Shown here piece after piece: positions 10,520-54,400 of a stretch of DNA of 64,000 nucleotides. Under the pieces are notes generated by a model that did no database searches, was not told where the DNA came from, and worked only from the letters and a program-made list of their open reading frames with translations. Location of the stretch: the IMG/VR virus record IMGVR_UViG_3300017963_000188, positions 248,001 through 312,000 of that record. The stretch is one strand, 5' to 3'. Numbering within the stretch: position 1 is the stretch's first letter; every line of letters starts with the position of its first letter. The position numbers were made by a program, and so were the translations under genes.

Positions 10520-13500
10520 GTGCTATTGAATTAAATCTTTCAGGATGGGTGCTAAGAAAACCCAAGGTGGCAGAATCGAATTCTCCAAATACCTCTGCAC
10601 CTGATACACAGGAACTTTCAGGGTTCAGTCCTACGGAACGAGCTGATTATATGGTAGCAGCTCTTAACAATGGCTGGATGCATGAAATAGAGTTTGCTTG
10701 GGTAGCAAACAAGGACCGTGGTCAGTTTGGTTTTTCTGATGCAGATCAGAGATGGACACCTTTACCTGGACGTTCCCCTCTTTCGTTGGGATCATTGTCA
10801 AATACTGAAAGGTTGGTTGCAGCTCCTATCCCTACTGATACTTATCCGTATCGATTTTACATTTCAGATCCTAGCAGTTCAGATTTGACTACTTTCAATG
10901 TAGTTTCCTCTTTCACATCTCCAGCTTCTCTTGCAGCAGGGACTGTTGAGATCCATGATACTTCAGGTGAGTTGAATTTTTCTCAGGATGATGTAGATGA
11001 TTTTGAAGGGGATGCAGTTTATTATCAGACTGAAGGATTTGTGAACTATGGGGATGAGAGTAAATACCGTTTAGGGGCTTTAGAAGACCCTCTAGACGCT
11101 TATCGTCTTGCTCTTAATCCCATTCCTTCCCCTACACAGTTTCCAATCATTAGAATTGGAAATAGACTTCCTCTTACCCCTGTAGCTGTGAACACAGAGG
11201 CTAATTTTACTAGTCCTAGTGCTGGTACTGTGCAATGGGCAAAAGACAAGGGAACTTTGAATTTTAGTTCTACAGATATCACTAATTACGAAGGTGATAT
11301 GGTGTATTACTGGGGGGCTTATGATTCTTTTGATAGTCCTGGATCACCTGGATTGAGTGCTAAAACGTATAGTCTTGGTACTATTGACATTTCAAATCCC
11401 GCTAATCCTACTACTACTGGTTCTATGCCTCCTAGTGCTGTGCCTTCCAGTGGTGGAGATGTCATAATTTATTTCACTTTTGCCACAGCTTATCGTCGAG
11501 TCACAGAGACTAATATTGTGTCAAGTTTTTCTACTACGGTGAAATATGGAGAAGTAGAACTCAAAACTGATGGTACTATCAAGTTCAATTATGCTGAGGC
11601 AAGACGATATAAGATTCCTTTATCCTGGAATGTTTATGCTGTGGTCTGTGATTATGATTTGAGTAGTGAAGATGTTGGGGTGCGGTATTTCCGTAGTTTA
11701 GTCAATAAGGATGGTTCTGATTCTGATGTTACAGATCTTAATTGTCTAGTCACTGTAGAAGATCAGACTCTGATTTCAGGTCTTATTGCATCTCCTATTC
11801 AAGCATTGCCAGTATCCCCTATAGAACCACCTCTTTCAGCTCCATACAAAAACCCTTCATTTAGAATTGAGGGAAAGGGGATCACAACATTACAGGACCT
11901 CAAAACTAGTTCTAGTGCTGGTGTGGGTTTTTTGCTTGATTATGAGACAAAAGAATTGACTCTTGCTTACAGGAGGAAGTTTGATATCAGTCTTGACACA
12001 GATGCTTCATTTTACAACTTTGAGGATGTTGGGATTGTTCAGTACGGTTTTGTGTTAAGAGATGGTCCTGAGGCTGGTCCAAATACGGACATGTCAGAAG
12101 GAGATGATTATCTCTTAGAATCTAATGGTGGAGCAATATTCTTTATCAATCGATTTGGTAAGACTCTTGACACTGGAACAAAGGGTCAAGTCACATCGGC
12201 AACAACATTTAGAGATACTACGGCTGATTTCACAGGGTTTGCTGGGAAACAATTAGTGATCTTATCAGGTCCAAATAAGGCTTCCTACCTTATTGATTCA
12301 ATTACTAGTAGTGTTGAATTAGAAATCGAAAGTAGTATTCCATTTCCTTCTACAGGTACTCGTATCGCTTATGAGATATGGGATGAACCAGAGATATTGG
12401 GAGATAGAGTCTGGGAAGAGCTTCAATTGCCTGAAGATTATTTCAAGTTGAAGAAACTTTTTCCTATTGGCACAATATCAAATAGTCCTAGAAGAACAAT
12501 TCCTATTGTAGACATTTCAGCTCGTGTTGAATTTCAGCTAGATGCTGATACTATTGATATTTCCTGGGTTGAAACAAATGGTGATTTTGGAACTCCCAGT
12601 GCTGGTACTGCTGAAGTCTCAAAAGAAACTGGGGATGTAAATTTCTCAGCAGCAGACCTCACTACTTATAGTGGTCAGACAGTATGGATCTCATGGTGGT
12701 TATATCCTTCAGATTACATGGTAAATTCTGGTAATGGAGGTATATATCTCAACACACCTCTATTGAATTGGGAAAGACTGAAGGCTTTTTACTACACAGA
12801 AGAGGGTGGCGATTTACAAGAGGAACACCTTGTAGTTCGTATTTGGGATGAGATTTGTGTGATCACCCCTGGTTCTGTGGATGTGCCATTTAATCCTGAT
12901 GATCGAGAAACAGATTCCAGTTTTGGCATTTTGGTGTACCGAGGTGATGTTACCAGTGGTGTTGGGAGATTCTACAAGTTATCTGATACTGAAACCAGTG
13001 AAAAAGTATCTGTTGATTGGGATACGAATACCCTAACATTCATAGATCCTTTGGCAGGAGATGATGAAGTCACTGTAGAATACTATATCATTGATCCTGT
13101 TGGGGGTGAAAAGTCATTCACTTTATCTACCTACCCAATATTTTTCCCAAGCTATGATTTCGAGGTAGGTACAAATGAATTCATAGCCTGGGGAGATGTG
13201 TCTTCAGTTTTTGTAGCAGATCAGTTTGTGTTTCTGGGTGGGAACGACATTTATAGAGTTTCAAGCTCATCATATGCATCAGGTAAGACCACAGTGACTT
13301 TGGCTTCTTATCTTCGTAAAACATACAAAGTACCAACATTTTTGGTATCAAGCCAACCCCTGGATTCAAATTACTTTGAGCCTGTAACTGAGCGTTTTGA
13401 GAAAACTCAGAAAGGAAGCTATGCTCTAAATTTCAAAACTATTGTGACTGGTATCAGTGTTGGTACTATCCTGACTCTGGGTGGCGATGACTATTTGGTT

Positions 13501-16500
13501 TTGGGTGTAGCTATTGAAGATAACCGTACTGTAGTTCAAGTTGGTTCCAAGTTCCCTTCAGAATATTACTACACACCAGGAGCTTTGGAGCGATCTATCC
13601 GACCTGTGTTTCCAGATCAGACAACAGAATTTGTGACAAGTCTCCCATTGGTTACCACAGAGCCATTTACTCTTCGTCTCAGGAATAAAAATGCCGGTAC
13701 TGTTGAGGAACTAGTTTTGGATACTGATTTGAGTGTATCTGAATCAGGTGCCCTTTTACTACTAACCAAGGCATTAGGTTCCAATGATATTCTTGAATTC
13801 AATTACGCTGGTAGAGAAACGTATGATGAAGACCATGAATTCTCAGGAGAGTATATTTACAGATATGTGCCTGATGATTCAAATCAGTTCTTGGGGGCTT
13901 CTATTATTGCCTCTTATACCGTCTATAACCCAGATACACTGTATTTCAGGGTAGAGCCTTTCAATACCATTGCTCTTGAAGTTTCATCTGCCCTGGGGGA
14001 AGCTGCGGCTTCTCAAGCACCTTCTTCAGGTCCTCCTGGCCCACCACCCCCACCACCAGCTCTAAATGAGAAAGGGAAGAGCACTTTCTACTGGGATTAT
14101 GGTGATACTGTAGACAGTGATGCCGTGGCAAGAAGGTATTTGTTATATTACAATGATGTCTGCAATTTGATAGAAGACCTTTTGGCATATTTTGATGGTA
14201 GAGTTGTGGGGGATATTCACGGGAAGTTCCTTTTTACAGACAGTCTTTACACAACTCCTGTTGAACCAAGTGCTGCTGTGAATCATATCGATAGCATTAT
14301 CTATATTTCACCAGCTTGGCCTGCATTCCCATCCCCTCCTTTCCCACCTGGATTCCCACCACGTCGTTCACAGGCAATGTGGAAGGGTTCAAGATATAGT
14401 CGTCTATATCCTGAATATGGTAAATTCTTTGGTGCTAGCTCTCCTACAGAAGGGGCTGGTCCTGGTTATTCATTCCCTGATGAATTTTTGAAAGAGATTT
14501 ATGAAATTGGTCGTGAGAATTTAGCAAGTATTTCAGGTGTGAAAGACCGTCCAGCTCGAACCAAACTTCTCAATTCAATAGCTTCAGGAGAAAGTTCAGC
14601 TACATTAGAAGTAGAGAGTGCTTCTGAAGATGGTGAGGAATTCATGGTTCCTGGGTTTGCTGTTGATGATGAGGTGATGATAGGACGTACCTCAAATCCA
14701 TATCTTGTGGCTGGGATAGTTACAGCAGTAGATACAGGGTCCACTCCGAATACAATCACTGTTGATTTCGTTTCATATAGCCTTACCCCCACATTACCAC
14801 CCCCCAGTGGTACTACATGCCCTGCTCTTTTACCTAATGACACGGTATATCATAATCCATTTTGGTGGGAAGATGATGGTGGCGGGAACCCAATTGGTCA
14901 TTTCCAAACATATAAGACAGGGCTTGATTTTGCAGTGGATATGAAAGCTGGGAATCTTATCAATATGGGGTTCCCATTCCCACTTCCAGGTCAGACTCCA
15001 ATTCAACCATTGTCTTACCTAGAAGGTAAGATTAGTTACGGCAATGCCCTTACAGAACCATACCGATTCCCAGCTTTGGATGGGCAAGTATACAATGATT
15101 GGAATGACAGAGAAATTCCATTCAAGATCAATGCAACAGCAAACTTTGATTTTGTATTTGAGGGTGAAGAAGATCTTATAGATGCTATTACGGCAAATAC
15201 TCTTGAGGGTGTTCGAGATACTGATGGTGATATTTTGTCAGATCGTCAGACTTTTGAGGGAGATATTGCTGGATACAATCTTGAAGTTAATGATGAGCTG
15301 ATTCTTCTTACAGGTTCAAATACAGGTCGTTATCTTATCACATCTTTTCCAACTTCTGTGCAAGCTAAGGTAGCAGCATTTAAACATCGTCAAGATGGTA
15401 CTGTTGATTATGAGATCTGGGATTCTACTGAAACAACTCTTAGGACCAGTGGGACTACAGCTAATATCCAAACTGACCTTCTGACACTTCAAGACACGGG
15501 TAAAAATTTCCCCGTAGCTGGAGTTATTGTTGGGGATAAACTTATCGTTAATTCAACTTCTGGGTACTACAATAACGGGACATATTGGATACAGACGGTT
15601 GCTACTACCACAGTTTCGGTGCGAGCCTTTAGTACCTCAGAGACTGGTGTTTCATTCGATATCAAACGAGGTACAAGCACTACTGGTCGGGCTTCTGGTG
15701 ATACAGGGTATTTTGACACCACTACGGTTTTCATTGATCCTAATGCTACATGGGAAACAGATGAATTGGTGAAGGGAGATACTCTGGTAATCCCTGAAGG
15801 GAAGAATCGGGGGAACTGGAGAATCAATAGTATTGATAGTGAAACTCAAATGACTCTTCAGGATGCTGTCCGAGTTGCTGAGGATGGGACAGGTGGTAGT
15901 CTAACTGACACAGGGGCAAATGATCGTCTTGATGTTTCTGGCACAGTATTTCAAAGTAGTGATGTGGGTCGTAAAATAACCATCACAGGTACTTCTAACG
16001 GAAATGATGGGACATATACTATTCTATCTTTTATTGATAGCAACAGTATCACAATTAGTGGAAGTTTCCCAGGGACCCTCCCTGATACAGGGAATTGGGC
16101 TCTATGCGTTGATTACAAAGTTGATGATGTGAGACGTGAATCTCAATATATAGCAGATTGGAGAACAAAACTTCTAGAAGAACAGTCTGAACTTCAAGAT
16201 GTTACTTTCCAAGGTATTTTGGATGACCTTTTTGATACTCTATATGATACATCAGCCTTTGTTTCTGGGACTTCCGGTGCGGTGACTGGGGCTCAAACTT
16301 TCCAAGACACTTCAAAAGATTTTGAAGTTCTAGGTGTAGTGAAGGGAGATATTCTAGAAATATCTTCAGGTGTAAATGCTGGTATGTGGTGGGTAGAAGA
16401 AGTCAGTGGAGATACCATTACTATTCCAAGTACAGATGCTTTTCCAAGTACAGATACTGGTCTATCGTATGATGTCTGGCAAGGAAATACTCGATTTTCA

Positions 16501-16863: not shown

Positions 16864-16875
16864 TAGAGGTGATTC

Positions 16876-17082
16876 ATGAATGAACAGGAAGAGAACATTG
16901 CTGAAGAGGTAGAAGAACCAAAGAAGGAGCCTTTCAAGTGGAAGCATAACAATGACATTATGCAGAATATGGCTAGTAAGTTCATAGGTCCTTTGGGAAT
17001 GCTCAAAGATGCTTTGGTAGAGGAAAGAAACAAGCTAGTAAAGAATCGTAACGAATGCAGGAAGCGTAATTTAAATGGCTGA
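16876..17082 (+). CDS. Small hypothetical protein
   Basis: 68 aa, SD GAGGTG upstream, overlaps the next start. Confidence 0.6.
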   Translation: MNEQEENIAEEVEEPKKEPFKWKHNNDIMQNMASKFIGPLGMLKDALVEERNKLVKNRNECRKRNLNG

Positions 17083-18934: not shown

Positions 18935-18935
18935 T

Positions 18936-19760
18936 ATGGCTTTTGATTTTCTAGGTACATTTACATCTGGTCAATATATGCGACTAGAGGAATTCCTTGA
19001 ACTTCAACAAGGAGACATACAAGGTCGCATAAATTATCTTCAAGGTGAAATTCGTCGCACAGGTGTCTTAGTGGTTACTTTTGATATCAACACTGGATAT
19101 ATAGAATCTATAGAAGCTAGTCCTGACAAGAGTCTCATAGGGAAATTGTTTTCAGCTTACATTCTTCAGGGAGGTGAGCCTGAAAAAGAACTACCAATAC
19201 GATCTTTTAATGATCCTATATATTTACCACAGGGATCTGCTCAGGCAATGCCAACAGAATTCAGTAATAAGAGACAGATTCGAGAATCATATAGATATGA
19301 TTCTTATATGTCTTTAATTATTCATTCTTTAAAGGAATGGGTATTGGAGAGCATAAAGTTCAAAAGAGAAGATTTAGAGTTCAAAATGAAGAAGTTAATG
19401 GATTGGTCAGATCAGTGTGCATTTGAAGCGATCACATTAGGTGTTGTTGGAGATATCAAGGTAGAAGAGCAGAGTGAGGAAGAAATAGATAAGAAGGTTC
19501 CAGATGGAGCCCAGGATTATTATATGGAGAAATATGCTCAGATAGCTCAGGCTGAATCAGAAGATCCAATGAAGAAAATGGTGGTTCTGTCATCCTTGAC
19601 TGCAATGATAGAAGAGGCCAATACAGAAGTTTATTCTGGAGACCATGGTAGTGTAACGATAGAAGATGGTGATGTATTTGGGTTGACGGCTGGTAAGATT
19701 AGGAAGACCATGGAATCTGATAAGGATGTAGAGGATGATATCCCAATAGTAGGTGCATAA
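18936..19760 (+). CDS. Hypothetical baseplate-region protein
   Basis: Track ORF starts at 18867, but ATG 18936 (MAFDFLG) follows SD GGAGGGG and the previous stop, so it is the likely start. Confidence 0.6.
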   Translation: MAFDFLGTFTSGQYMRLEEFLELQQGDIQGRINYLQGEIRRTGVLVVTFDINTGYIESIEASPDKSLIGKLFSAYILQGGEPEKELPIRSFNDPIYLPQGSAQAMPTEFSNKRQIRESYRYDSYMSLIIHSLKEWVLESIKFKREDLEFKMKKLMDWSDQCAFEAITLGVVGDIKVEEQSEEEIDKKVPDGAQDYYMEKYAQIAQAESEDPMKKMVVLSSLTAMIEEANTEVYSGDHGSVTIEDGDVFGLTAGKIRKTMESDKDVEDDIPIVGA

Positions 19761-20833: not shown

Positions 20834-20835
20834 AT

Positions 20836-25074: not shown

Positions 25075-28000
25075 ATGACTACTTATGACACAACTGGGAA
25101 CCCTATTTTACCTGCTGGGGTAGAAGAATTTTTAGATGGGAACCCCTCTACTTTCATAGACCGATTCATTCGCACTAGGTTTGGACCTATTGTTAAGGGT
25201 GATGGCGAGGGGAAGATTGCAGATGATCCTTCAGATGTGACTGTCCTGGTGAATAGTACCCCAGCTACTGTAAAGGCTGTACTAGGTCTTATCGGTATTG
25301 TGGTTTTGGAGGATGCACCATTACCAACTGATACAGTAAAGATTTGGTATGATCATTTAAGTCGTCCACGAGTTGAGTTTAGGCGTTTGAATTCAGTTGA
25401 GTTTGTCTTAAATGCAGATGGTAATAGAGCTTGGGGTTATCAGCGATATCTTTATGAGAATGTGTTGATAGATCCTTCTATTGACAATCCTCTTGGTTTC
25501 CAAGGAGGTGCTGTAGGTACTGATCCAGAGCTTTTTGGATACTTCTATCGAGCCTATGAAAGAGCATATTCCATAGCTCTGAATGACCCAAATCTGTTGT
25601 TGTTGAATTCACCACACCATCGTATCGCATATCCTCCATTTTCGAGAGGTCTTTACGAGACTTTGGTGAGCTATGATGGTAATGTTCTTCCAGAGAATCA
25701 TGTCACTTATCCATGGGATTCTGCTGGTTCAGGGATATCTTCTGTAGATGGTCGTTTGACCATTGAAGATAACAGTAGTGGAGCTTTTCCCACAGGGAAA
25801 GGTTACTATTACTATCGTCCAGAAGACCTTTCATTTCAGTATACAATGTCGTTTTCATATCGTTCAAAAGTGACATCTTATACTTTGACAGGTTGTTTTT
25901 CAGGGGTGGCTTCTGGGTTCATTGATGGTAGGAATCTTTGTCTCATAGCATGTATAGAAGATTCTGGTACAAAATATATTGGCATACTGAAAAAAGGTGG
26001 CGATGAAACAATATTTTCATCTTATGAAAGTTATGAGTTGGATTGGAGTGAGTATCATATCTTCAGACTATATCGTACCATTGATCAGGTGCGTCTTTAT
26101 GTAGATGGTGGTGCTGCACCAATACTTACTGTTTCCACTTCTGACTTAGCTGATCCCAATGAATTAGAACTCCAGATTGACTTTATAACGGGAACATTTT
26201 TTGGGAGTATGAGCCGGAATTCAGTCAATGTTTCTGAATGGGATTATCTAAGATATCTGATTACTCCTATCTCTCCAAGTGAGTCGGCTCATTATGTTAA
26301 TGTCTTGTATGAGGCAAATTCTCTTCCTACTGAGGCAGGTTCACCTTGGTTTAAGATAGGGGCATTTGGAACTGAGAGATTACTTGGTATCGAAACTCTT
26401 TTGTTGAACAAGATATCAGCTTCTGAAGAGCCATATTCTTCTGAGGGAGGTTTAATTTCGGGGGAAGTGTTTGGGTATCATCGACCCGAACCATTCCTCT
26501 CATCTCAATCTGTGCTCGCTTTAGACTGGAAAGTGAGAGGGTATAGTTGGACTCATGGTGTTTCTGAGAGATCTCTAGGTGTATTTGCAAATGATTATGA
26601 TAGGCTATTAGCTATATCATTCTTCTCAGATGTTGAATTACCATTGTTATCATATAATGGGCAAGTTACTCCTGATACTGATCCAGAAACTCCTTGGACA
26701 CCAACTGGAACAGCTACAATTGAGGTGGTAGATAATATCCTCAATATAGATGATAGTTCTGATACTGGAGGTATCTTATATGGCAGAGAAGATGTAGCTA
26801 ATAATATTCTGGGGCATGATCAGAATTATATCTATGAATTCAGAGCAAAGGTAAATTCATATTCAGCAGATCCTTCTGGGTTTATAGGTGTCTTGACTGA
26901 AATTTTTGATGGTGTGCCTGGTACTGACTCTGGTCCTTTGATTGCTAGTCTCACAGATCTTCCTGTATCAGATAGTTTGACAGTTACAGGGCTGTTTAGT
27001 CCTGATGATGTAGATAAATATGTTACAGTCACCAATTCGACTCAAGGTAATAATGGTACTTATCAAATTGTAAGTTATATTTCAGCAGATCAGGTTCAGG
27101 TATCACCTTCATTCCCAGGTACAATTCCTGAGACAGGAACTGGTGTTCGAGCAAATATGTTAGGGGGGTATCCTGGTCGTAACATACAAGTGATGTTGAG
27201 AGAAGAAGGTGGTGGGACCAAGGTAATTTCATTCGCTTCTGAAGGCACTGTTTTATCTTCTATAGCTTTTACTTGGAACGATAGTGAATTTCATACCTAT
27301 CGAGTCATTGTCAATCAAGATAGTGACCTAGTAATGCTTATGGTTGACGGTCTTTCAAAGGGAACATTGGCCTATACTTCTTTCACTGAGAGTGCTGGTG
27401 ATACTGCTTATTTTGAGTTTGGATCTTCTGGTCCTTCATCTGATGAGTCCATTTCTAATGTTGATTGGGATTATTTCAATTCATATCCCATAAGAAGTTC
27501 GAGTAATGAATATGTTGGTATTTACAAGGGTGGTGATGTCACCGATATAGATAATTATGAGAAAGTATCTGTAGATTTCTCTTCTTATCATGAATATAGA
27601 GTAGTCAGAGATCCTAATGGCTCAGTTAGTCTTTTCATTGATGGGGCTTTAGCTATTTCATTTTCTTATCTGGATTTGCCGGATGCTTATGGCACATTCT
27701 TTGATATTGAAGGTGGGGCTGGATCTGGGGTGTATTGGGGTTCTTTTGACGAGTCAGCTCTTGTTTTAAGTGAGTGGGATTATCTCAGATTCACTATTGC
27801 TGGTGCTAAGGGATTTGATGTCATAGCACCTCACCATGAAATCTTGAATCAACAGAATGTCATTGCAAGTCCAGATCATATTTATGGTGATGTGGCAGAT
27901 CATAGCCATACCAATTTCTTGTCTTCTTCTACTGGTATCCCCACTCCTATAGAAGATTATTATGATAAAAAAGAAGTGATTGATGCTTACACTCAGTTGA

Positions 28001-35455: not shown

Positions 35456-38400
35456 TGCCGACTAAAGTAGACCCAGGCACATTAGCCATTGGGAATGGTA
35501 AAGCAGCACAGGATTCTGTGTCTGTATCTTCCCTTGACTTTGCTCATGTAGTGGATTTCCAGGCTGCTCTATCAGGGCATCTCAATGATCCAATAGGTGC
35601 TCATCCAGCCACAGCTATTTCAACTCAGGATACCTATGGTAAATTCGATTGGACCCATGTCGAAGGGTCTTTGAATGAATTATCAGATCTCATGCCAGAT
35701 CTGATCAATACTTTGGGACAAGAGCAAGAGGGAGTCCCAAATAGTGGTGTGCCTTATTGGGGTACATTGGAAGATACTTACGATAGAATTGGAACCACTC
35801 AATCAGGTGGTTTTACTTGTACTACAGCAAATCATGCTCATGCTTCATGGAGTGGTGGGAATCAGGGGGGTACTCCTGGTAATTGGTTAGTAGAGACTCA
35901 TTGTTTACTTCAAAGTTCTATCACTACCTTTGATCTTTCTGGTATTTTGTACCCTGCTGACAGAGGGTATTTAGTATTGCTATATGCAAAGAATGGTGTC
36001 TTTGATAATACTGTGAATACAATTGAAGTTGGGGAACTTGATCTAGAAGCTAATTTCAGTGAGTCTTATAGACGTGTTCCCAATTATCAACAACCTAATT
36101 ATGTGGGTGTAGATACACATGATTCTGGGCCTGATATTTTCACACTAACATATCGACTCCCAGCTCTTAAGGAGTACAGTGCAGGAACACCTTATGAGCC
36201 ATATGATTTCAATTATCTGCAATTTCAGTTGGCTTATTTCAGTGTATCTATTGATCTCACATTATCACCATTCAATATTGGGGTTGATGTAGATTTTGGT
36301 TCTTTGAAACTGTTTCATTTCAAGACCTACAGTAATGTTGCTACAGCAGACTATAGTGCTTCAAATCTGTATGGGTCTCATGGTAAGTATGATATCTATA
36401 GTGAAGTCGATCCTGGACTGCCTGTTATTGGGACTCCTGGGACTGATTATATAGTTGAACCTACTTTTCCAGTTGGTACTGAAACACCTCCTGGTGGTAG
36501 TTATAACTGCGATTTGGCATCTCCAAATGATTTCACAAGTGCTTCAGCAGTCTTTGCAGGAGATGCTACTGATAGAGGGAAGATACTTACAGTCACAGGA
36601 TCAGTGAATGGTAACAATGGGGACTACCAAATATTAGTCGAAGATACGACTACTCATGTCAAGGTATATCCTGATTTTCCGGGGTCTCTTCCAGAAACCA
36701 CATTGAATTTTAGTATTTCTGCTCCAAATATTTTCAGATTGTCTGGTATATATCACTATGGTTCTGATAATGGATTTTGGTTGAAGTCAAGTATTGCAGG
36801 AGCAGTTTCTGGACTATGGAATCTCTCATATCTTACTGGGGTAGAATCAGATAGTAAGGTTTCTTCTGGATATCTTAGTGATAAATCTCCTTTGAAATAT
36901 GACCTTACAGATTTTGGTGCTGGGACTAGAGAAATCCCATATCATTTGTTAGATAATAATGATGCTATCAATCCTACTGATGGGTGGGATTTGAGTAAGG
37001 GAAATGGTCCAGGGCAGAGTGATGATGCAGAATACATAGGGGTTCTCATCAGCGGATCATCAGGTGGTGGTGTGAGTGACGATGCAAAAGTAAAAAATAC
37101 AATACGCACACCTTTTGCTTTGACAGAACTCGATGCAATCACTCAAACTGGTAATAAAATTCTGACAAATGCTTATGAACAGATTATAACTGGTAGATCA
37201 CAGATCGAAGATTTCACTACAGAGTTATTCAGGTATCATTTTGATGTGGCTCAAGATGAAAACACAGATTTGTTTGAACATGAGAGATACCCTTTAGTTC
37301 CTTATACTAGAGCTACTCCCAATATTGGTAATGATGGGGTGGTTTCTTCTACCAACACACTTACTTCTGCTACTGCAAATTTCACCAGTGGTGATACTGG
37401 GCGCACAATATTGATTTCTAGTGTGAAACTTTATTGGTCTGATAGTACAGCAAACAAAATACAAAGGTCCAACATTGATGGTTCGAGTGTTGAGGATGTT
37501 GTCACTGGTATTGGAGATGCTGCTGGTTTAGCACTCGATATTAATGGTGGGAAAATATATTGGGCCAATGCAACGGATCAGAAAGTACAACGAGCTAATT
37601 TTGATGGTTCAAGCATTGAAGATTTGGTGACTGGTCTTGGCACTAAGGTGTTTGCTGTTGCTTTAGATTTAGCTGTTGGGAAAATGTACTGGGCAGATTC
37701 GGATGCTGATAAAATACAACGATCTAATTTAGATGGGTCTGATGTTGAAGATGTTGTTTTAACGGGGGTAGGTAATCTTCAAAGCCTCGCTTTAAATCAC
37801 AATCTCCAAAAAGTATACTGGTCTGATCAAGGGACTTCAAAAATACAACGAGCCAATTTTGATGGTTCTGATGTTGAAGATGTTATCACAGGTGCTTCAG
37901 GTCCTAATAATATTGCTTTTGATTATACTGAAGGGAAGATGTACTGGACTGAGACAGCAGGTAACTCTATACGGAAAGCGAATTTTGATGGTTCAAGTGC
38001 AGTAAATGTCCTTACAGGATTGTCATGGCCAAGAGGTATGGCAATAAATGTTGAAGAAAGGAAGATTTATTGGTTTGACGGGAGCACCAACAATTTAAGG
38101 CAAACAGATTTCGATGGTAGCTACCTTTTGACTTTGAATTCAGGGATTTCGAATATGCCTCATATAGCATATTATGATAATCCTGTGTACGATGGTAGTT
38201 ACAAAGCTACATATGTTAGTTCTACTCAAATTACAGTGGAACCTGATTGGCCTACTCATATAGAAACTTCTGTGTCTTGGTACTTCCCAACAGTCTGGGA
38301 TTCTGATCTTGCTTTAGGATCACATATCCAGAACGAGCTTCAAGTTTTGGATGGTAAACTTGTTTACCCACAGACTAATTTCACTGCTGGGTATTACCCT

Positions 38401-39609: not shown

Positions 39610-42600
39610 ATGCCAACTAAAGTAGATCCAGGTACTCTTGCCATAGGTAGTGGTAAGGCTGCTCAAGATAGTATTTCAGTATCTTCTCTTGATTTTGCTC
39701 ATTTGATTGATTTTCAAGCAGCTTTGTCAGCTCACGTCAATGACCCTGATGGGGCTCATCCAGCTTCTGCTATTTCGGTGCAGGATGTTTACGCAAAATA
39801 TGATGGTGTGAATGCTGAAATCGTGTTTGATGAAATTTCTGATCTTGTTCCAGATTACCCTAATGCTATTGGTGAAAGTCGATCAGTTCCAAATTCGGGA
39901 GTGCCTGATTGGGGTGTTTTGGATACATACTCTAAGACAGGTGGTTTCACTTGTGATACAGCAAATCATGGTCATACATCGTGGGGTGGTGGGAATCAAG
40001 GAGGCACCCCAGGGGATTGGATAGCAGAGACTCATTGTTTGATTCCTGATACAGTCACAGGCTGTGTAATTACAGGTACACTGTACCCTGCTGATAGAGG
40101 ATACCTTGTGCTATTGTATGCTACAAAGGGTGTGTTTGATAATAGTGGGGATACAATAGAAGTTGGAAAGCTGAATCTAGCTTCTAATTTTGATGAGCTT
40201 CGTAGACGAAACCCTGCTGTGGGATACCAACAACTTGATTACACAGCTTCTGAAAATCATTGGGACCCTGGCACAGATATATTTTCACTAACGTATCGTC
40301 TTCCAATGCTAAAGGAATATGATGCTGGAGTACCTTATACTACATATGATTTCAATTATCTTCAGTTCCAATTAGCTCGATACACAGCCACATTGGATTT
40401 GACGGCTACTCCATTTGATATTGGTACTGATGTAGATTTTGGATCTCTTAAATTGTTCCATTTCAAGTCATATACAAATGTGGCTGGAGCTAATTACAGT
40501 GCTTCAAATCTGTATGGGTCACATGGGAAATTGGATATTTATTCTGACACTTCACCAGCAGCTCCAACTTTAAATGAAGCTGGTGGTGAGGTATTAATCA
40601 ATGCTGCATATCCTTTGGGTACAGAAACAACGTCAGTAGTAGCAAATGCTGACCTCACAACTCCGAACAATCTGGCTGCTGGTACAGCAATCTTTGCTGG
40701 AGATTCTACAGACCGTGGCAAGATACTTACCATTACAGGTTCTAGTCAGGGGAACAATGGTACTTACCAAGTTTTGAATGAGGTAGACGCCTCGAATGTC
40801 AAGGTATACCCTAATTTCCCTGGCACATTGCCTGATACAGTGACACCACAAGTGCAGATAGAAGGTGCTAATGTAGTACGTCTTTCAGGAATAGCACATT
40901 ATGGTCCTGATAATGGTTTTTATGTAGACCAGACTTTTATCACCACTCCAGATTTTTGGAATAATTCATACCTAACCAGTGATGTGGCTGATCCAAAAGT
41001 GTCTTCGGAGTATTTAAGTGATAAGTCACCTCTGAGTTATGACTTTAGTGATTTCGGAGTTGTTGTAAAAGACATACCTTACCATTTGGATCTTTCTTCT
41101 GTTAGTTTGAGTAAAGGAGATGGACCAGCAATAGATACTTCTGCTAGTCATCGAGCTACATTCATAAGTCAAGAATCTTTAGTAGTAAGAAAGGGTGGTA
41201 GTTCCTATTTGTCTAGAGTATCACATATAGTACGTTCTCCTTTCACCACAATGCAAGATTACAGCTCAAATCCAGTTGGTATCCTTTTGGTAGACGTTTA
41301 TGGGCAAGAAATATCTAGTAAAATGAAAGAAGAATTTTACACAGAGCAGTATAGATATGATCTTGGTACAGATCTCTTAGAGTTCATCAAGTATCCAATA
41401 ATTCCTTATGATCGTAGTGCTCCAAATTTTGGGGATGATGGTGTTGTTTCAGGGTCAAATACCTTTACTTCAGCTACAGCTAGTTTTACTTCAGCAGATA
41501 CTGGTAGAATAATAAATATTGCTAAAAGGCCAAAATTATATTGGACTGACCGTCAGGATGACCAAATTCAAAGATCTAATCTTGATGGAGCATTTGTCGA
41601 GACCGTGTATTCATGGGGACAGAATCCAAATGGTATAGCTTTAGATACTGTTAATGGTAAAATTTACTGGGCTGATTTTAATTACCAAGAAGTAAAGAGA
41701 ATGAATTTTGATGGTAGTGGTTTTGAGACAGTATGGTCGGGACAGCAAGTATATAAAATAGCACTTGATGTAGATGCTGGTAAAATTTATTACTCAGACA
41801 GAGGAGACCATTGGATAAAACGAGCAAATATGTCAGATGGTTCTAGTAAAGAAAGTCTTATTAATTATGATGATGTCGATTGTGTGTTTCTTGATATCGA
41901 TGCAGGTAAAATATACTATACTACAGGAAGCCCAGGATTAAATACCATCTCTAGAGCTAATATGTCTGATGGTTCTAGTATTGAAGTTTTGTATACTGTA
42001 ACCAGTCCTGAATGGATACCTGATTTTGCTTTTGACTTAATACATGGATATATTTATTTTACAGTTATTGGTCCTTCAGGTAGAATTATGCGGTGTGATT
42101 TGGATGGTTCAAATGATGTCACAATAACACCATCAGTAATGGCTTACAATATTGAAATTGATGTTGATGGTGGTAAGTTATATTGGAGTGATGTGACTTC
42201 CAATGTCATTAAATGGAGTGACTTGGATGGTTCTAATATTGAAAGTATTATTTCAGTGACATCAGGGTCCGAATCTGTGAGGGATATGGCTCTGATGTTG
42301 GAATCTTCTTTTGAGAGTTATACTGCTACTTATGTCAATGGTACTGAAATAAGTGTGAGTCCCGATTGGCCTTCAGTAGATGGTGTTATGCGGGAATGGA
42401 GATTTCCAGTGCAATTTGATTCAGATGCAGATCTTTCAACATTCACACAAAAAGAACTTCAAGTTGCATCTGGGCAATTAGTAGTGCCAGAAAATGATTA
42501 CACCGCAGGTTGGGCTTTACCAAGTGCTGGTCAGTTTGATTATAGTGGTTTAGCAGGTGGGGACCCTGCTGATACAATTCGATGGTATACAAGACTTTTT

Positions 42601-43785: not shown

Positions 43786-46700
43786 ATGGCAACATTCAAC
43801 GACCATTTCAAAGATCTCTTAAATCTTGTTGCCAAGAGAGTTTTGGGTCGGGAGCACACTTCTGATATTCCTATTGACTTGGAAGGAGCCTATCGTCCCT
43901 ACAATCAAATAACTCCATTTGATAAGATTGAAGATACAGGTCTTAGTGAATTTAAGTATACTTCTGGTATCAGGAAGTCAAACGCTACTCAGCCAGAAGT
44001 TAATCTTTTCAGTTTTTCTGATAATATTTCTGATAATGCTCAAGGACGTATTGCTACTATTTACGGTATTAAAGAAGTAAGCTATTCAGATACTGATGGT
44101 AGTGACGTTGGGTATGTAGCTGATAACTACAGATTCATTCACAGGACGTTTGATTTCCCTGACCAGGGGGTCAGTGCTGGGGATGTTATGTTTGTGCCTC
44201 TGACAGGTAGATTCTACGTCTCAGATGCAGTTATTACAGGAGATCCACCTAATACTGGACTTCAATTTCCTGTAGATACTTTTTCAGAGCCTACATTCAC
44301 ATTTGGTTCAGATATTGATGTTCTGATTCTTCAGAGAAATGCTGTTCAACTTTTCACTGTATCTGGACCCAATGTAGAAGTAGGTCGAGAACAAACCTTT
44401 TTTATGGTTACTCCTGATGTGGTTCAAAACCCAAGTCCTTATCTTGCTGACTTAAATTTGCTATCTCCAAAACGTCTACGTCCCTTGATGCCTCATAGGA
44501 AGAGTACCAAGATTGATTCAATCTTCACAAAAGGAGTGTTGGGTCTCAAATCAGATTGGGATTTTATGCTGGTTCTTTATCCAGATGATGGTGCTGGAAA
44601 TCCAGATTACACAAAACCAATCATAGGACCGAGACCTATAATCGATAGCTCTATCTCTGATGAACAGGAAATGATTATTGACCATATGAATGGTTCTGTT
44701 CATTTTACAGTGCCTCCACGTCCAGGAGATGAAATCAATCCAAATGCTGTGACCGGAGCACCCCTGAAACTGTGGGCTATCTTTGCTACCATAACAATGG
44801 GCACTAGTGTATCTCAGACAAATTCAAATAGTCTTGTTCGAGGTGTCAGTGATTTCAACCCAGTATTGGTTGATGATAAAACAAGCACCCCTTCATATTT
44901 CAGATATGACCAGAATAGAAAGATTTGGTCGTTATTTTCAGGAGAAAAATATCTAGAAACAGATCCAGCAAATCAACCAGCTCAAGGGTTTGAGGTTGGT
45001 GAGCTAGGAGTAGAGAAAACCAACAGAGCAGGTTTCAGATTAAATCCAGAGAATGAAACTTGGGAAGTGTGTTCTATCCCTTCTGATTCTGATTTCATAC
45101 CGTTACGACTCACTTCAGGAGAAGTTGGGGGTACTCATCCTGGTATCAGTGTGGACGCTCCAGGATATACAGGTGGTTTCTTTTATAACAGTGGTGAAGA
45201 TAGATGGGGTTTGGATAAAGACCTATACATGGTTACTGCTGTTGAGGAATTAGGTTCTGATTCTTTACCTAATAGTTCGAATGTGAAAGTGGCTGTGTCT
45301 GGTAATTTTGCATATATTATCAGGAATGTGTCTGGTGATGGGTTCCTTTATGTATATGATATATCAGATCCTAATGCTATTGTTATGAGAGATTCTGAAG
45401 TTGTTGCAGGTCGTGAATTTCTAGACATAGATATATCTGGAACCAATGTTTTTGTCCTTATAACAAATGAAATTCAAGTCTACAATGTTTCAAATCCAGA
45501 TAGTATCTCATTGACAGATGGGTACCCTGCTGGTTCAGATGTGTATTTCCAAAGATTAAAAGTAATTGGTGATTATGTTTATGTTGTTGTACTATCATAC
45601 TTTACAGAATTATTCAATTGGGGATCTAGTCTATGGGTTCTTGATTTTAATGTGACAACGGCAGATGAACTCACTTATAGAGATGATGCTAATGTTCTTG
45701 GTCCACATGATCCACCTGGTCCTGGTTATGTGTCAGTGACAACAACTGATGTTTCTATAATAGCTACTATGATGTATAAAGAAGTTTTGTATACAATTGA
45801 TGTCACAGATCCAGATTCTGTATCTGTTCTTGATAGCGTTGTTGTTACAGATGGAACAGAAGTTGATGTTGAAAGAGACATAGTTGCAGTGTTATGTCCT
45901 GATGAATCTATAGATACTTTGAGGTTGTTTGATATTTCCAATCCGTCTTCCATACAAGTTAGAGATACTACAACATCTGGTTTGGATTCACCTGTTGATG
46001 TGATTGTTTCTCGTGGATATGTTTGGGTAGCTAATAGTGGTGATATGACACTTCTCAAATTTAGTGCTGTGAATCCTCTTAATATTGTGTTAGATAATTC
46101 ATATATCCAAACAGGTAATGGATTACTAGATCTAGATCTTAATAATAGTAAATTAGCTGTGTTAACAAGTAGTCCAACTACTGATATTCTGAAAATTTAT
46201 AATGAAATAAATACACAAGTACAGTTCCATCAAATAATATCTTCTTCAATTGATACTGATTATCTTGATTCTGAAACGGCAGTCATTGAAGATTTGACTG
46301 CAACAATAGTCAGGACAAATACTATTGATGGTGGCAGTTCTTTATTGTCTGTAGATGCTAATACTGAAATAACAGGTTCACTAATAACTAATGGTGTGAC
46401 CAATTCTGGTATTGTGCGGAGTTCTGATTCTAATATACCAATCCAAGGAAGTGCTACTGGGTCATATTCATCTAGTCAGATAGTAGGTTCTCAGCTCGCT
46501 CCTTGGGGTGTTGATATCGATTACACTACTGGTAAAGTCTATTGGGCCAGTTATGGTAGATCTTCTGGGCAAGATATCATTCAAAGAGCTAATCTAGATG
46601 GGACGAATGTTGAAACAATAATTGGTGGCTTGCAGCAACCATATGCTTTAGAGTTAGATGTTCCTGGAGGAAAAGTCTATTGGTCTGATATGTTTACCAA

Positions 46701-47415: not shown

Positions 47416-47425
47416 GAATAGATTT

Positions 47426-50400
47426 ATGGTAGATTTCAATGAACATCTTAAAGATCTGTTAGACCTAACCTCAAAGAAGGTTTTGGGTCGTGAGCATACT
47501 TCAGGAGATCTTTCTCCTGAACTTGAACAGATCCGTCGCCCATATAATCAAATCACACCATATGATTATGTTAAAAATACAGGTCTTGAGAACCTTAGCT
47601 ACACAAGAGGTATTAGGAAACCATCTGGTCAAAATCCACAAAAGAATTTGTTTAACTTTTTGAAAAACTCCGGTTCAGATGCCATTGGTCGAATTGCTAC
47701 CATAGTTGGGATAGAAGAACTAGGTTCTTCAGATGTGGATGGAGCTAGCAAAGCTCAATTCTTGAGTGGTCCTGATAGATTGGTGCATGACACTGCAAGT
47801 TATTTCTCAAACCAAGGAGTGACGGCAGGAGACTATTGTTACTTCCCATGGAATAGGAAGTTTTATCGTATCTTCAGTGTGGCTGCCGATACAATTCAGT
47901 TTGATGGTACTCCTCTTAGTGATAGTGGGTTTGTTGCTTCTACATATTATGATGCCCTGATCCTTACATTACAGCCTGAAAAATTATATACGGTTCCTGG
48001 CATCCTTGGACAAGAACAGACATACTTCATGATGAGACCTGATAGTCCTCCAATCATTAATTCAGGAGATTATGCTTCAGATCCTCACGAGTTGGAAGAA
48101 TATCGGTTACGACCATTGATGCCATATCGAAAGCCTGTTCGAATTGATGCTATCTTCAATGAGGCTTTAGGAAGTGAAGATTTAAAAGAGAATTGGGATT
48201 TCCAGATTGTACTATTTCCCGATGATGGATCAGGTTCTCCTGATCTTACAAAGCCTATTGTAGAGGGTCCTGTTGTTATAGACAGTGAGAAATCACTAGA
48301 TGAACAGGCTATGATTGTGGATCATGCTAATGGTTCTGTTCGGTTTACAGTACCCCCTCAACCTGGAGATGCTATAAATCCAACTTCTATCACTGGTCAA
48401 TCTTTGAAGCTTTGGGCTGTATATGCTGTTATCACACCAGATCCAACTCATTTTTCAAATGGTGATGTGTCTGGATATAGTAATATAGCAAGAGGTCTGA
48501 CAGATTATCCTGCAATTGATGTTGAGTCAGGTCTATATGATTACCCTTCATATTTTCAATATGATCGTAATCGTAAAATCTGGTCACTATTTTCTGGATC
48601 TAAATATCTAGACCCAAATTCTGAGGACCAACCAGTCCAAGGTTTTGAGATTGGTGAAATGGGTAGGGGAAAAGATAATAGTCCTGGATTCAAGTTAGAC
48701 CATGTGAATGGTAGGTGGGAAGTTAGATCAAAAGCATTAGATGCTTCTGAGGACATTACTCTATTTCTAAGTTCTGGTGAAGATGGTGTATCACAACTTG
48801 GGATTGGTGCTCTTCAAAATGGATCAAAGTTAAGTGACTTTGGATATGATGAGTCTGATGATAGATGGTCTTTAACAAGTAATTTGAGATTGAAAAAATC
48901 TCTTGATGCATTCACTCTACAGACATTGGGATCAGATAATTTGGATACATTTGCTGATCCTGATATGATTCGTATTTATAACAGTAATTGCATTTTAGCA
49001 TTGAGAAACAAAGGTACTTATACAGCAGAAATTGGTTTGTTTCATGCCGCAGACCTTGATACAAATTCAGTGACTCTTAAGGATACCATTACAGTTCCGA
49101 ATGCAGTGAGTTTTGTATTTGCGAATTGGAATGGTTATAGACTGTATGTTGCTTTAAGCAATGGTGATATTGCTAGATATAATATTCTTCCAACTATATA
49201 TGATGCTGGAGCTACGTTTAGTTATGTTACCACATATACAACAATACCTTATGGATATACAGTTGTTGAGGTGAAAGATATTCAGTATGAAGGGACACCT
49301 AGACCTCCAAGTGATCCAGATCCTTTTGGAGAATCATTTCATAGAGTATTGGTTTCTGTTATTATAGATGATGCAGGGGATCATAAACTTACTTTTGGTG
49401 GTGTTGAGCTTCAAGTTGGTGGTGGTGATTACATACCAACCACTGTTTTCCGTACCTTTGGTGCTGTCCTAACTTCAGATACTGATCCAGTTGGACAATA
49501 TATATTTGTAGATGGGCTTTCAAATGATTATTCACATGAAGACAATGACCATATCTATGCTATAACAAATAATGGTGTTGATTGGTATACATCCACAGAT
49601 TTCCCTGATTCTACAGATTTTATTGTTGGGTATCGTGATTTTGAATCTATATCAAATGTAATAGCTCAATGCTATTATGACCGAGTTTTGTATGTAGTTT
49701 CATCTACAGCATTACGTGTCGTTGATGTTCCTGATGATGAGACATACACTTTTATAACCAGGGGATCAACTACAGATGGTATTGAGACTCCAATAGATAT
49801 TACTATTGATGGGCCAAATTCTATTGTTTACATTTTGAATTCAGATTCAACAGTGTCTATCTATGATGTGTCAGATCCTGATACACCTACATTCCTTAGG
49901 ACTCGTCCAGTTAATTTCTCCTCAACTCCACGTCAGATAGAGTTCTTTGATTACACTGGTAATGCTTTAGCATTAGAGCAAGGTGATGATAATGGTGGTG
50001 TGGTTTCTTTGATTGGTGATGAGACGTATCTATCAACTATCGATAATTTACGTTCCAGCTCTATAAATACAGATGTTATAAGTACAGACTTATTAGAGTC
50101 AAATGACCCTACTGATATTTTGAAATTGAATGTAGCAAAAATTATGTCAGGGGAGTTTGTAACTATCGGAGATGGTACCAATACATTTGGGCATTACAAT
50201 GGTACTGATGAAACTCCATTTTCAGATGCTGTGACAAAACTCCCAAATGGTGGGACTATATTTGTTTTTCCTGGGACATATACTTTTGGTAGTAATGTCA
50301 ATTTACCCAATGGTGTAAATTTGATTGGATCTGATCCAAACAATTGTGTTATAGAAATTGGTTATAATGGTTCTTGTTTCACAGGGCTAGGTGACCAATC

Positions 50401-52294: not shown

Positions 52295-52303
52295 AGGATT
52301 GTC

Positions 52304-54400
52304 ATGGAATCATATTATCAGAATTTACTCTTGAAGGCTCTTAAAGCTACTCAGGGAAAGATTCAAATATCTAGTGGAGCTTTGATAGGTCAAGAAGGTC
52401 TTACGATTCCTGTGAGCCAATCTGTGCCTTTTGGGAATGAGTTTGGACATGCCTTAACGGATCTCGAAGTTCAAGCTACGTTCAGAAAACCATGTAGTAC
52501 ACAAGCTCTCAAAAATCTGTTTACTACCTTTGAGGGAGAGTCTTCATATGGTTATAAAGGTCGGTTAGGAACTTACTATGGTATCCAGGAATTGTCTTAT
52601 TCAGATCGTGATACAGCCGATTATGCTACGATTACAGCTACCAATCAGTTGACTCATCAGACCTTTAGTTGGGGTGATGATGTTACTGCTGGTGATATGC
52701 TTATTGTTTCTGATCTCAATCCCGTATCAGGTACAAAAACTGGTGTGAGACGTATTTCTGGAGGTGCTGCAACTGTTATCAGCACATATTCAGGACTTGG
52801 AGTCTCCACTAATCAAGTAGATGCTTCTGTACTTAGACTTAAGCCAGTGCAACTTTTCACAGTACCTAGTCCAAATGGAGCAGGCACTGAACAGTTGTTT
52901 TTGACTGTTGATCCTAATAGTGATGCTGTGTCCAACCCTGAATATTTATCCAATTTGGGGCTGGTCAATGAACATCGTGTCTATCCTTTAATACCACCTA
53001 GAACTGGGGAAGAACGGGCTGATGGTATTTTCTATAGGATTTCGGATTTAAAAGGTATGGGGGAGAATGACCTCAGGGCTGATGAGTGGGGTTTTAGGAT
53101 AATTCTGTATCCTTCCAATAGTGGTGGGACCAGTCCAGATCTCACAAAACCAATTGCTTCTCTTAATCCTGTTATAGATAGCACTAAACCATCTGATGAG
53201 CAAGATATGCTCATTGATTATGCTACTGGTTCGGTGTATTTCACTACCCCACCTCGACCTGGAGATGCTATCAACCCAAATAGCTATACAGATGGTCCTA
53301 TCAAGTTATGGGCTGTATTTGCTGCATTTAGTCTTGAATCAGAAACAGGGGATTCTACGGTTCATAATACAGCTCGTATGATTATGGATCTACCATCTGG
53401 TGCTGATGCTGTATATGACCATCCTTCGTTCTTGAAATATAACAAGACCAAAAAGTTGTGGGGATTCTATTCAGGAAAAGGGGCTTTGAAAACAGCAGCA
53501 GGAGACCAACCTGTCCAGGGGTTCGAGTTTGGGGATGATGTTGCTACTGAAGAAACAGTTCGTATGATATTGGACCAAGTAAATGGTAGGTGGGAAATTT
53601 GTTCAGTTCCTACAACATCAGCAAATTATCAAGGTCTGTTCCTTTATTCAGGTGTTAATGGTGGTCAAAACCCTGGTTTAGGTTTCAATATTGGTGGTAC
53701 AGAATATGGCCTACGGATTGATAATTCTACTTTGGGTTGGACTTTTGATGGGGCAAGTTTTGTCTTCAATCAAGGTGCTTCTGGTAACATTGCCATTTCA
53801 ATAAAGGGTGATGGTATAGCTCATGGTATGACTGGGCATGTGCCAACTGATGTGTTTGGGATCATTACTCGACAGCATTCAACAGAAGGTGGGTTGATGG
53901 TAGCAGCATGGTCCAGTGGCACACGATCATTGGAGTTAACTGGTTCTTCTACCACTGCTGATACATCAACATCAATTTCAGCAGCAGCTCCAATCCAACT
54001 TTCAGGCCAAAAAAGAGACACTACTACTATCCAAGCATTAGCAGACACTGAAAATGTAGTGGTAATGCAGAATTTCTTCTCTTCCAAATGGATTCTAAAA
54101 GGCAATGGAGATCAATATATTACTGGGGCTTATGCTAATTACGATTCTGAATCAGATGCTTTAGCCTGTCAAGATCTTGCTTATGAATTGTCTGGCTTGA
54201 CAGATAAGGTGATTCAATATAATCGTAAGAAGTTGGAGAAAATCGGTGTGATGAAAAATGGTTTCATTCACCTTAACAATATGCTAGGATTGCAACTTGG
54301 AGCTATTGGTGAAGTATTCCAGATAGTTGAGATTTTATGTGACAAAATGGGTCTAAGTTATGAAGAACTACGACAAATGATTCGTGGTCAGGAGATGTGA
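52304..54400 (+). CDS. Tail fibre-like protein, family C paralog 3 (no propeller insert)
   Basis: 698 aa. PDLTKPI...DEQDMLIDYATGSVYFTTPPRPGDAINP...KLWAVFA and QPVQGFE are shared with the two preceding ORFs. Helical C-terminus, possibly chaperone-like. Confidence 0.7.
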   Translation: MESYYQNLLLKALKATQGKIQISSGALIGQEGLTIPVSQSVPFGNEFGHALTDLEVQATFRKPCSTQALKNLFTTFEGESSYGYKGRLGTYYGIQELSYSDRDTADYATITATNQLTHQTFSWGDDVTAGDMLIVSDLNPVSGTKTGVRRISGGAATVISTYSGLGVSTNQVDASVLRLKPVQLFTVPSPNGAGTEQLFLTVDPNSDAVSNPEYLSNLGLVNEHRVYPLIPPRTGEERADGIFYRISDLKGMGENDLRADEWGFRIILYPSNSGGTSPDLTKPIASLNPVIDSTKPSDEQDMLIDYATGSVYFTTPPRPGDAINPNSYTDGPIKLWAVFAAFSLESETGDSTVHNTARMIMDLPSGADAVYDHPSFLKYNKTKKLWGFYSGKGALKTAAGDQPVQGFEFGDDVATEETVRMILDQVNGRWEICSVPTTSANYQGLFLYSGVNGGQNPGLGFNIGGTEYGLRIDNSTLGWTFDGASFVFNQGASGNIAISIKGDGIAHGMTGHVPTDVFGIITRQHSTEGGLMVAAWSSGTRSLELTGSSTTADTSTSISAAAPIQLSGQKRDTTTIQALADTENVVVMQNFFSSKWILKGNGDQYITGAYANYDSESDALACQDLAYELSGLTDKVIQYNRKKLEKIGVMKNGFIHLNNMLGLQLGAIGEVFQIVEILCDKMGLSYEELRQMIRGQEM

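What the first reader, a model, noticed from the sequence alone, without database searches (positions are those of the whole stretch)
12200..53000. One ~50 aa module recurs across at least seven structural genes
Seen: pattern (T)FxD...F...(G)VxxGD/DxGxxLxIxGxNxGxYxI...xVxPxFPG. It occurs about six times in the 2115-aa ORF (about 12205, then 15240-16480), once in the 1658-aa ORF (about 26970-27150: NSTQGNNGTYQIVSYISADQVQVSPSFPGTIPETG), and intact plus split copies in each family B paralog (about 36530 and 40670). Partial versions (DFPDQGVSAGDVMF, YFSNQGVTAGDYCY, SWGDDVTAGDMLIV) occur in the three family C proteins. Inference: a small beta-barrel used as a general building block or protein-protein connector across this virion.
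Basis: seen in the sequence. Interest (0 to 1): 0.6.

Follow-up and report, generated by a model that had tools for sequence, protein, structure and literature searches.

The report
Reused small beta-barrel in phage tail genes
A roughly 70-residue beta-barrel domain with no entry in the curated family libraries is reused 11 times in four giant baseplate/fibre genes of a 358-kb phage, twice with a whole beta-propeller inserted into one of its loops, and the same domain turns out to be widespread in large metagenomic proteins, the ones I could place being phage-like.

The parts
12181..12399 (+). Module copy A1 (type I), aa 556-628 of the 2115-aa ORF 10516-16863
   Evidence: HMM hits (foreign-only profile i-E 1.5e-16); genome scan
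15229..15435 (+). Module copy A2 (type I), aa 1572-1640; first of a tandem run of five
   Evidence: i-E 5e-7 with the foreign-only profile
15469..15681 (+). Module copy A3 (type I, longer hairpin loop), aa 1652-1722
   Evidence: i-E 1.3e-14
15709..15900 (+). Module copy A4 (type I), aa 1732-1795
   Evidence: i-E 4e-14
15907..16131 (+). Module copy A5 (type II), aa 1798-1872. This is the copy that BLASTP links to the other three genes.
   Evidence: BLASTP 40-51% identity to ORFs 25075, 35455 and 39610; type II HMM 3e-17; foreign-only profile 1.4e-11
16279..16491 (+). Module copy A6 (type I), aa 1922-1992; the copy that was folded
   Evidence: Best HMM score (4e-20); AlphaFold2 model me9eb92825b99, pLDDT 92.9
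26962..27189 (+). Module copy B1 (type II), aa 630-705 of the 1658-aa ORF 25075-30051
   Evidence: 2.7e-12
36517..36750 (+). Module copy C1 (type II), aa 355-432 of the family B ORF 35455-39597
   Evidence: 7e-16
37327..37425 (+). N-terminal half (strands 1-3) of split module C2, aa 625-657 of ORF 35455-39597
   Evidence: Foreign-only profile positions 2-31, i-E 6.9e-7; genome scan 4.9e-6; aligned to the intact module of P0002
37426..38187 (+). YWTD (LDL-receptor class B) beta-propeller nested in the beta3-beta4 hairpin of module C2, aa 658-911
   Evidence: Pfam Ldl_recept_b 1.2e-41; absent from ortholog P0002 at exactly this point; about 41% identical to the family's C-terminal propellers
38188..38304 (+). 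C-terminal half (strands 4-7) of split module C2, aa 912-950
   Evidence: Foreign-only profile positions 34-67, i-E 1.2e-4; genome scan 7.6e-4; stitched halves versus the type II profile give probability 91%, P 1e-6
40663..40893 (+). Module copy D1 (type II), aa 352-428 of the family B ORF 39610-43773
   Evidence: 9.8e-12
41431..41523 (+). N-terminal half of split module D2, aa 608-638 of ORF 39610-43773
   Evidence: Foreign-only profile i-E 1.9e-6; genome scan 1.5e-5; alignment to P0002
41524..42309 (+). Nested beta-propeller of module D2, aa 639-900
   Evidence: BLASTP to the family's other propellers at 35-39% identity; aligns with the inserted propeller of ORF 35455 and with a gap in P0002; weak NCBIfam propeller hit at aa 639-735. 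The Pfam best stretches for this ORF lie in the C-terminal propeller.
42310..42429 (+). C-terminal half of split module D2, aa 901-940
   Evidence: Seen only by alignment to ORF 35455 and P0002 and in the stitched profile; not significant on its own by HMM
44113..44238 (+). Candidate diverged partial module in family C ORF 43786-47415, aa 110-151
   Evidence: hhalign best location; single-sequence P 0.097, seventh best of 28 proteins; family-level profile probability 76%, P 2.3e-5. Probable, not proven.
47783..47926 (+). Candidate diverged partial module in family C ORF 47387-52294, aa 133-180
   Evidence: HMM i-E 0.069; hhalign P 0.027; family-level profile
52631..52834 (+). Candidate diverged module in family C ORF 52304-54400, aa 110-177
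   Evidence: HMM i-E 0.0034 over profile positions 3-69; its ortholog in relative L008 gives 0.0049 at the same place; family-level profile

Best explanation
The pattern is a real, independently folding domain of about 70 residues: a small closed beta-barrel of seven short strands. It belongs to a large sequence family that is absent from Pfam, NCBIfam and PHROGs. That family occurs mostly as head-to-tail arrays in large metagenomic proteins, phage-like where I could check, and in some giant bacterial adhesin-like proteins. In this 358-kb jumbo myovirus it is present 11 times in four genes of the baseplate/fibre block, and probably in degenerate form in three more. I take it to be a promiscuous structural or decoration module. 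It adds rigid, self-contained beads to very large baseplate-periphery and fibre proteins. Its exposed beta3-beta4 hairpin (G-x-N-x-G) tolerates insertion, so in the two family B fibres one copy serves as the socket that carries a whole YWTD beta-propeller, a likely receptor-binding head. Shown here: homology of the copies, the fold class (as a prediction), the nested insertion, and the breadth of the family. Inferred: virion location, and the passive scaffold or weak-adhesion role rather than a specific binding function.
Confidence: 0.65

Rival explanations
1. Connector code. The modules, above all the four similar type II copies in four different giant proteins, are docking domains. They would tie these proteins to one another or to a common baseplate partner, as the N-terminal OB domains of the F2-pyocin side fibre ring the central fibre, or as gp10-like domains link branched tailspikes.
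Against: Copies lie at internal, not terminal, positions and in tandem runs of five. Type II-like copies are a widespread subfamily in unrelated metagenomic proteins, so their likeness here need not reflect a shared local partner. No conserved surface signature was seen. The PDB sequence hit is above the usual significance line and covers only half the module. No complex prediction was run.
Confidence: 0.2
2. Glycan-binding adhesin or carbohydrate-binding module. Each barrel would bind host surface polysaccharide weakly, and arrays would give avidity for reversible first attachment, as proposed for Ig-like and OB-type decorations of phage tails.
For: Structural neighbours include barrels of polysaccharide-degrading tailspikes: phi92 endosialidase and colanidase, a K1 capsule lyase and Solidus gp83. 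The module co-occurs with adhesin-type Ig and cadherin domains in giant bacterial proteins. Tandem multiplicity suits avidity.
Against: Conserved positions are core and turn residues, with no conserved aromatic or polar patch. No CBM or lectin family is matched in Pfam. Fold matches are weak and generic.
Confidence: 0.15
3. Not a shared domain at all: a chance or compositional beta-hairpin motif, or a patch spread recently among the genes by recombination.
For: A five-copy type I HMM alone recovers the type II copies only at E 0.02-0.5. The L-x-I ... G-x-Y-x-I motif also resembles a common Ig strand motif (Hoc, E 0.48).
Against: A foreign-only profile recovers every copy at 5e-7 to 4e-20, against a reversed null of 0.38. 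Profile-profile comparison links the subtypes (P 5.7e-6). A deep alignment folds confidently. DNA of the type II copies in different gene families shares only ~30-nt patches at about 80% identity, and the two family B paralogs align at 73% over 141 nt in line with their 48% overall protein identity, so the sharing is old rather than recent recombination.
Confidence: 0.02

Closest known systems
OB-type 'decorating' barrel of siphophage tails: C-terminal domain of T5 Dit pb9 (4JMQ) and N-terminal OB domain of F2-pyocin side fibre PyoF13 (25VE)
   Different: Similarity is below the level that shows homology. Those domains occur once per protein at a terminus, whereas here the copies are internal, in tandem arrays and in several genes. 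The ring-forming or anchoring role of PyoF13 is not shown here.
Promiscuous Ig-like decoration domains of phages (Big_2, FN3, I-set; Fraser et al. 2006, cited from my own knowledge)
   Same: It works alike: a short all-beta module scattered over tail, fibre, sheath and head proteins of unrelated phages, often tandem, dispensable-looking, and shared with bacterial surface proteins.
   Different: A different fold (closed barrel, not a two-sheet sandwich) and no sequence relation. No Ig family in Pfam is matched.
FCCH domain of ubiquitin E1 (Uba1) and the wider class of six-stranded barrels (EF-Tu domain 2, ferredoxin-reductase FAD-binding domain, riboflavin synthase)
   Different: No sequence similarity, an unrelated biological context, and scores in the range expected for any small barrel. 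This is a fold analogy only.
Nested domain insertions in phage proteins, e.g. the I-domain barrel inserted in P22-like coat proteins (weak profile hit to chains deposited as 'Putative coat protein', 6MNT and 8SKG, E 0.18 and 1.2; assigning these to P22-like I-domains is from my own knowledge)
   Same: One domain lies inside a loop of another, and a small barrel is involved.
   Different: Here the barrel is the host and a 260-aa YWTD propeller is the guest. The sequence hit is not significant.

Membership tests
The uncurated barrel-repeat family defined here (alignment A3; 1,119 cluster representatives) | Significant match to a profile built from family members other than the sequence under test | tested here: met
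   A profile of 110 foreign copies recovers all 9 intact window copies at 5e-7 to 4e-20 and 3 of the 4 half-copies at 1.2e-4 to 7e-7; the reversed null is 0.38
The uncurated barrel-repeat family defined here | Membership of the three family C proteins | tested here: inconclusive
   HMM E 0.0034, 0.069 and >1. The six-sequence family profile gives probability 76%, P 2.3e-5, over only the N-terminal 42 columns. The three proteins rank 5th to 7th of 28 by single-sequence hhalign.
Any curated family (Pfam-A, NCBIfam, PHROGs) | Score above the curated or usual threshold on the module | tested here: not met
   The 2115-aa ORF with six copies has 0 families in Pfam, PHROGs and NCBIfam. Scanning each copy alone gives no family shared by more than one copy. 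Seven of ten foreign multi-copy proteins have no Pfam hit.
OB-type decorating/anchoring domain | Mediates fibre attachment by oligomeric ring formation | not tested
   No complex prediction or experiment was done; the precedent is described in PMC13455828
FCCH domain of E1 enzymes | Barrel inserted in an E1 adenylation domain, with sequence relation to E1 | tested here: not met
Ig-like phage decoration domains | Two-sheet beta-sandwich matching Big/FN3/I-set profiles | tested here: not met
   No such Pfam hits. Fold searches return barrels. The Hoc hit at E 0.48 is a strand motif only.
YWTD / LDL-receptor class B beta-propeller (the inserted guest domain) | Repeated Ldl_recept_b blades above the Pfam threshold | tested here: met
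   Ldl_recept_b at 1.2e-41 (ORF 35455, best stretch aa 742-771, inside the insert) and 5.7e-30 (ORF 39610). Inserted propellers are 35-42% identical to the family's C-terminal propellers.

The most novel reading that the evidence does not exclude
The module is a hitherto undescribed, very widespread 'phage barrel repeat'. Its type II form would act as a shared docking code that assembles four different giant proteins into one branched baseplate-fibre network. Its hairpin would be a natural insertion site by which phages graft new receptor-binding heads (here a duplicated propeller) into existing fibres.
Probability: 0.15. Interest if true: 0.6.

Novelty: new member of a known kind. Interest (0 to 1): 0.4.

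Why it matters
It gives a name and a model to a domain that no curated library annotates, although it occurs in over a thousand protein clusters, many of them giant proteins and those examined phage-like. A profile of it would immediately improve annotation of jumbo-phage structural genes. The propeller nested in the barrel's hairpin, with an uninterrupted ortholog for comparison, is a clean natural example of how fibres gain extra binding heads. It also marks a loop that could be used to engineer display on phage fibres. It does not overturn anything: small accessory barrels on phage tails are a known theme.

Tried and rejected
- Folding the five-module region (421 aa) without an alignment gave pLDDT 32 and was useless.
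- DNA megablast and tblastn of the array against GenBank phages found nothing.
With the type II and family C alignments it returned only contigs of this same phage.
- The word search with the module region found only one relative, so the exhaustive profile search was used.
- The ESM-Atlas feature search of the array gave scores of 0.87 or less and no named family.
- PDB sequence search with the nine-copy profile gave only E about 0.5-1.5 hits to Hoc and spectrin SH3, which I treated as strand motifs.
- Family D (ORFs 32879 and 55380) was tested for a hidden copy and has none (P 0.35).
- Recent recombination as the source of the type II similarity was rejected on DNA identity.
- I sent no complex-prediction job, because I do not claim binding.
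Full report
**Setting**

The window is bases 248001-312000 of a 358,038-bp IMG/VR virus record rated complete. All large ORFs lie on the + strand. Recognisable genes are a hub/lysozyme-like protein (7855-9924), a sheath-initiator-like protein (19760-20833) and a Baseplate_J/gp6-like protein (20836-24264). The finding therefore lies in the baseplate/fibre block of a jumbo myovirus. Most proteins there match nothing in PHROGs or Pfam.

MAFFT aligns nine copies cleanly.

- Six copies lie in the 2115-aa ORF: aa 556-628, then 1572-1640, 1652-1722, 1732-1795, 1798-1872 and 1922-1992.
- One lies in the 1658-aa ORF (aa 630-705).
- One lies in each family B paralog (aa 355-432 and 352-428).

An unbiased all-against-all BLASTP links A5, B1, C1 and D1 across four otherwise unrelated ORFs at 40-51% identity, E 1e-11 to 5e-5.

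The copies fall into two subtypes. Type I is A1-A4 and A6, with a short G-x-N-x-G hairpin. Type II is A5, B1, C1 and D1, with a longer hairpin and a conserved proline-rich loop before the last strand.

- A type II HMM finds A5 at 3e-17.
- A five-copy type I HMM finds the type II copies only at E 0.02-0.5.
- Profile-profile comparison links the subtypes (probability 85%, P 5.7e-6).

The strongest test used a profile built only from 110 foreign copies. These were themselves found with a window-derived profile, but no window or ortholog rows were used in building it. It recovers all nine window copies at 5e-7 to 4e-20. The best hit on reversed sequences is 0.38. A scan of the whole 358-kb genome finds only these copies and the half-copies described below, all in the same four genes.

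**The split copies**

In both family B proteins, the first third of the profile matches just before a YWTD beta-propeller. For ORF 35455 the remaining part also matches just after the propeller; for ORF 39610 that C-terminal half is seen only by alignment. Stitching the halves together gives probability 91%, P 1e-6 against the type II profile.

The decisive evidence is comparative. P0002 is a 1109-aa ortholog from another metagenome. It aligns end to end with both paralogs but has an uninterrupted type II module (aa 620-697) exactly where they carry about 260 extra residues of propeller.

On the fold model the break falls in the beta3-beta4 hairpin. The relative's locus L008 is syntenic, with one family B gene and two family C genes against two and three in the window. 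The inserted propellers are 35-42% identical to the C-terminal propellers of the same family, and 37% identical to each other.

The simplest history is as follows. The fibre's own propeller was duplicated into the hairpin of module 2. The gene was then duplicated in the window's lineage.

**Family C**

The three proteins share a 480-570-aa N-terminal region and differ downstream: a propeller in ORF 43786, a right-handed beta-helix in ORF 47387, and neither in ORF 52304. The evidence for a module copy here is mixed:

- By HMM they are not significant: 0.0034, 0.069 and >1.
- The ortholog of ORF 52304 in L008 gives the same full-length weak hit, 0.0049.
- In a scan of all 28 proteins by hhalign, these three rank directly after the four true carriers, all at the same place.
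- With six family C sequences, the region matches the foreign profile at probability 76%, P 2.3e-5, over the first 42 columns; the reversed control gives 0.57.

I rate a diverged or partial copy as probable, not shown. Family D (ORFs 32879 and 55380) has none.

**What the module is**

- No Pfam, NCBIfam or PHROG model covers it.
- The exhaustive profile search of 1.84 billion representatives finds 1,119 proteins at E<=1e-3 and 237 at <=1e-10. These typically have 2-13 stretches in proteins of 400-7,800 aa. Spacing between copies peaks at 60-99 aa, meaning head-to-tail arrays.
- Seven of ten top hits have no Pfam domain at all.
- Two contexts I examined are gene arrays with almost no Pfam hits, which I read as phage-like.
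- Weak PHROG links go to tail sheath, tail fibre, major tail protein with Ig-like domain, head protein and a tailspike N-terminus.
- Some carriers are giant proteins with Big_1/Invasin_D3 or Big_9/cadherin-like domains. One of them is a named Desulfatibacillum protein.
- Both subtypes, and intermediates between them, are common among the foreign copies.
- The conserved columns are core hydrophobics and turn Gly/Asn residues.

**Fold**

Without an alignment the array did not fold. With 126 aligned copies, module A6 folds at pLDDT 92.9, pTM 0.81, into seven short strands.

- Foldseek against the PDB gives nothing at E<=1e-3. Its best rows are phage tailspike domains (phi297 gp61, LKA1 gp49, phi92), tail-tube and tail-tip decorations (Mystique, Chi), Uba1 FCCH (TM about 0.6) and ATPase N-terminal barrels.
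- BFVD neighbours are tail fibre, tail tip, baseplate-J-like and sheath proteins.
- ESM-Atlas neighbours reach TM 0.70-0.82; five of the six rows shown are 79-100% viral and one is a eukaryotic acyltransferase cluster.

The fold class is therefore a generic small closed barrel already seen on phage tails. The scores are too low to assign a superfamily.

The deep profile touches the F2-pyocin side fibre at E 0.016. The OB domain of that fibre anchors it to the central fibre (PMC13455828). T5 Dit carries an OB extension (PMC7291167).

**How it most likely works**

Several lines fit a self-contained structural or decoration bead:

- the conservation pattern, which is core and turn residues only;
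- the tandem arrays;
- internal positions within the proteins;
- co-occurrence with stalk-type domains;
- an array preserved in a 56%-identical ortholog, with modules neither more nor less conserved than the rest.

Such a bead would lengthen and stiffen giant peripheral proteins, and its hairpin can carry a guest domain. This is functionally analogous to Ig-like decoration domains, though the module is not a member of that group.

Two rivals stay open. One is specific docking, suggested by the likeness of the four type II copies and by the PyoF13 precedent. The other is weak glycan binding, suggested by the tailspike neighbours and by the avidity that arrays would give. Neither was tested. Chance and recent recombination are excluded.

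**Verdict**

The corrections are the domain size, the existence of two subtypes, and four certain genes plus three probable ones. This is a new, uncurated but widespread member of a known kind (accessory beta domains of phage tails), with a neat nested-propeller variant. Interest is moderate.

Noticed in passing
window 43786-54400 (ORFs 43786-47415, 47387-52294, 52304-54400): Family C is a cassette series. It has a shared N-terminal region of about 480-570 aa (35-42% identity) followed by different C-terminal heads: a YWTD propeller, a right-handed beta-helix (Beta_helix/NosD, depolymerase-like), and a shorter tail with no Pfam match. This looks like swapped receptor-binding or enzymatic heads on a common anchor.
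   Followed up: partly
window 47387-47426: The listed GTG start of ORF 47387-52294 overlaps the previous gene. The alignment with its paralogs begins at Met14, and the database protein is 1622 aa, so the true start is probably nt 47426.
   Followed up: partly
L008 (JGI 3300033153, 16.8 kb) versus window 32177-59384: A related phage has the same gene order but one family B gene (without the nested propeller) and two family C genes. The window phage has expanded both families to two and three genes.
   Followed up: yes
window 32879-35455 and 55380-59384: Another paralog pair (family D) shares its first ~300 aa at 39% identity and brackets the family B/C block. It has no module copy.
   Followed up: partly
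L001, L003, L004, L006, L007 (IMGVR_UViG_3300017971_000194, 186 kb) and L002 (IMGVR_UViG_3300028840_004170, 90 kb): Two other IMG/VR contigs, from other samples, are 100% identical to the window over the stretches compared. The same phage was therefore assembled from several metagenomes.
   Followed up: partly
window 29590-29802 (aa 1506-1576 of ORF 25075-30051): The 1658-aa module-bearing protein ends with a CHB_HEX_C_1 / Fn3_assoc domain (E about 3e-11), a carbohydrate-enzyme-associated accessory domain.
   Followed up: no
window 3856-5249: Adjacent ORFs 3856-4419 and 4419-5249 are distant paralogs (24% identity over 151 aa, E 1e-10).
   Followed up: no
window 16132-16278 (aa 1873-1921 of ORF 10516-16863): The gap between modules A5 and A6 is predicted helical, in a low-confidence single-sequence model. 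It interrupts the otherwise contiguous five-module run.
   Followed up: no
window 1-64000: All ORFs of 150 aa or more except one nested antisense ORF are on the + strand, with positive GC skew throughout. There are no tRNA genes. An SNF2-family helicase at 61085-62710 marks the end of the structural block.
   Followed up: no
P0006 / P0155 (Desulfatibacillum aliphaticivorans, 3667-3708 aa): A chromosomal bacterial giant protein with Big_1 and Invasin_D3 arrays carries seven module stretches. The domain is therefore not confined to phages.
   Followed up: partly
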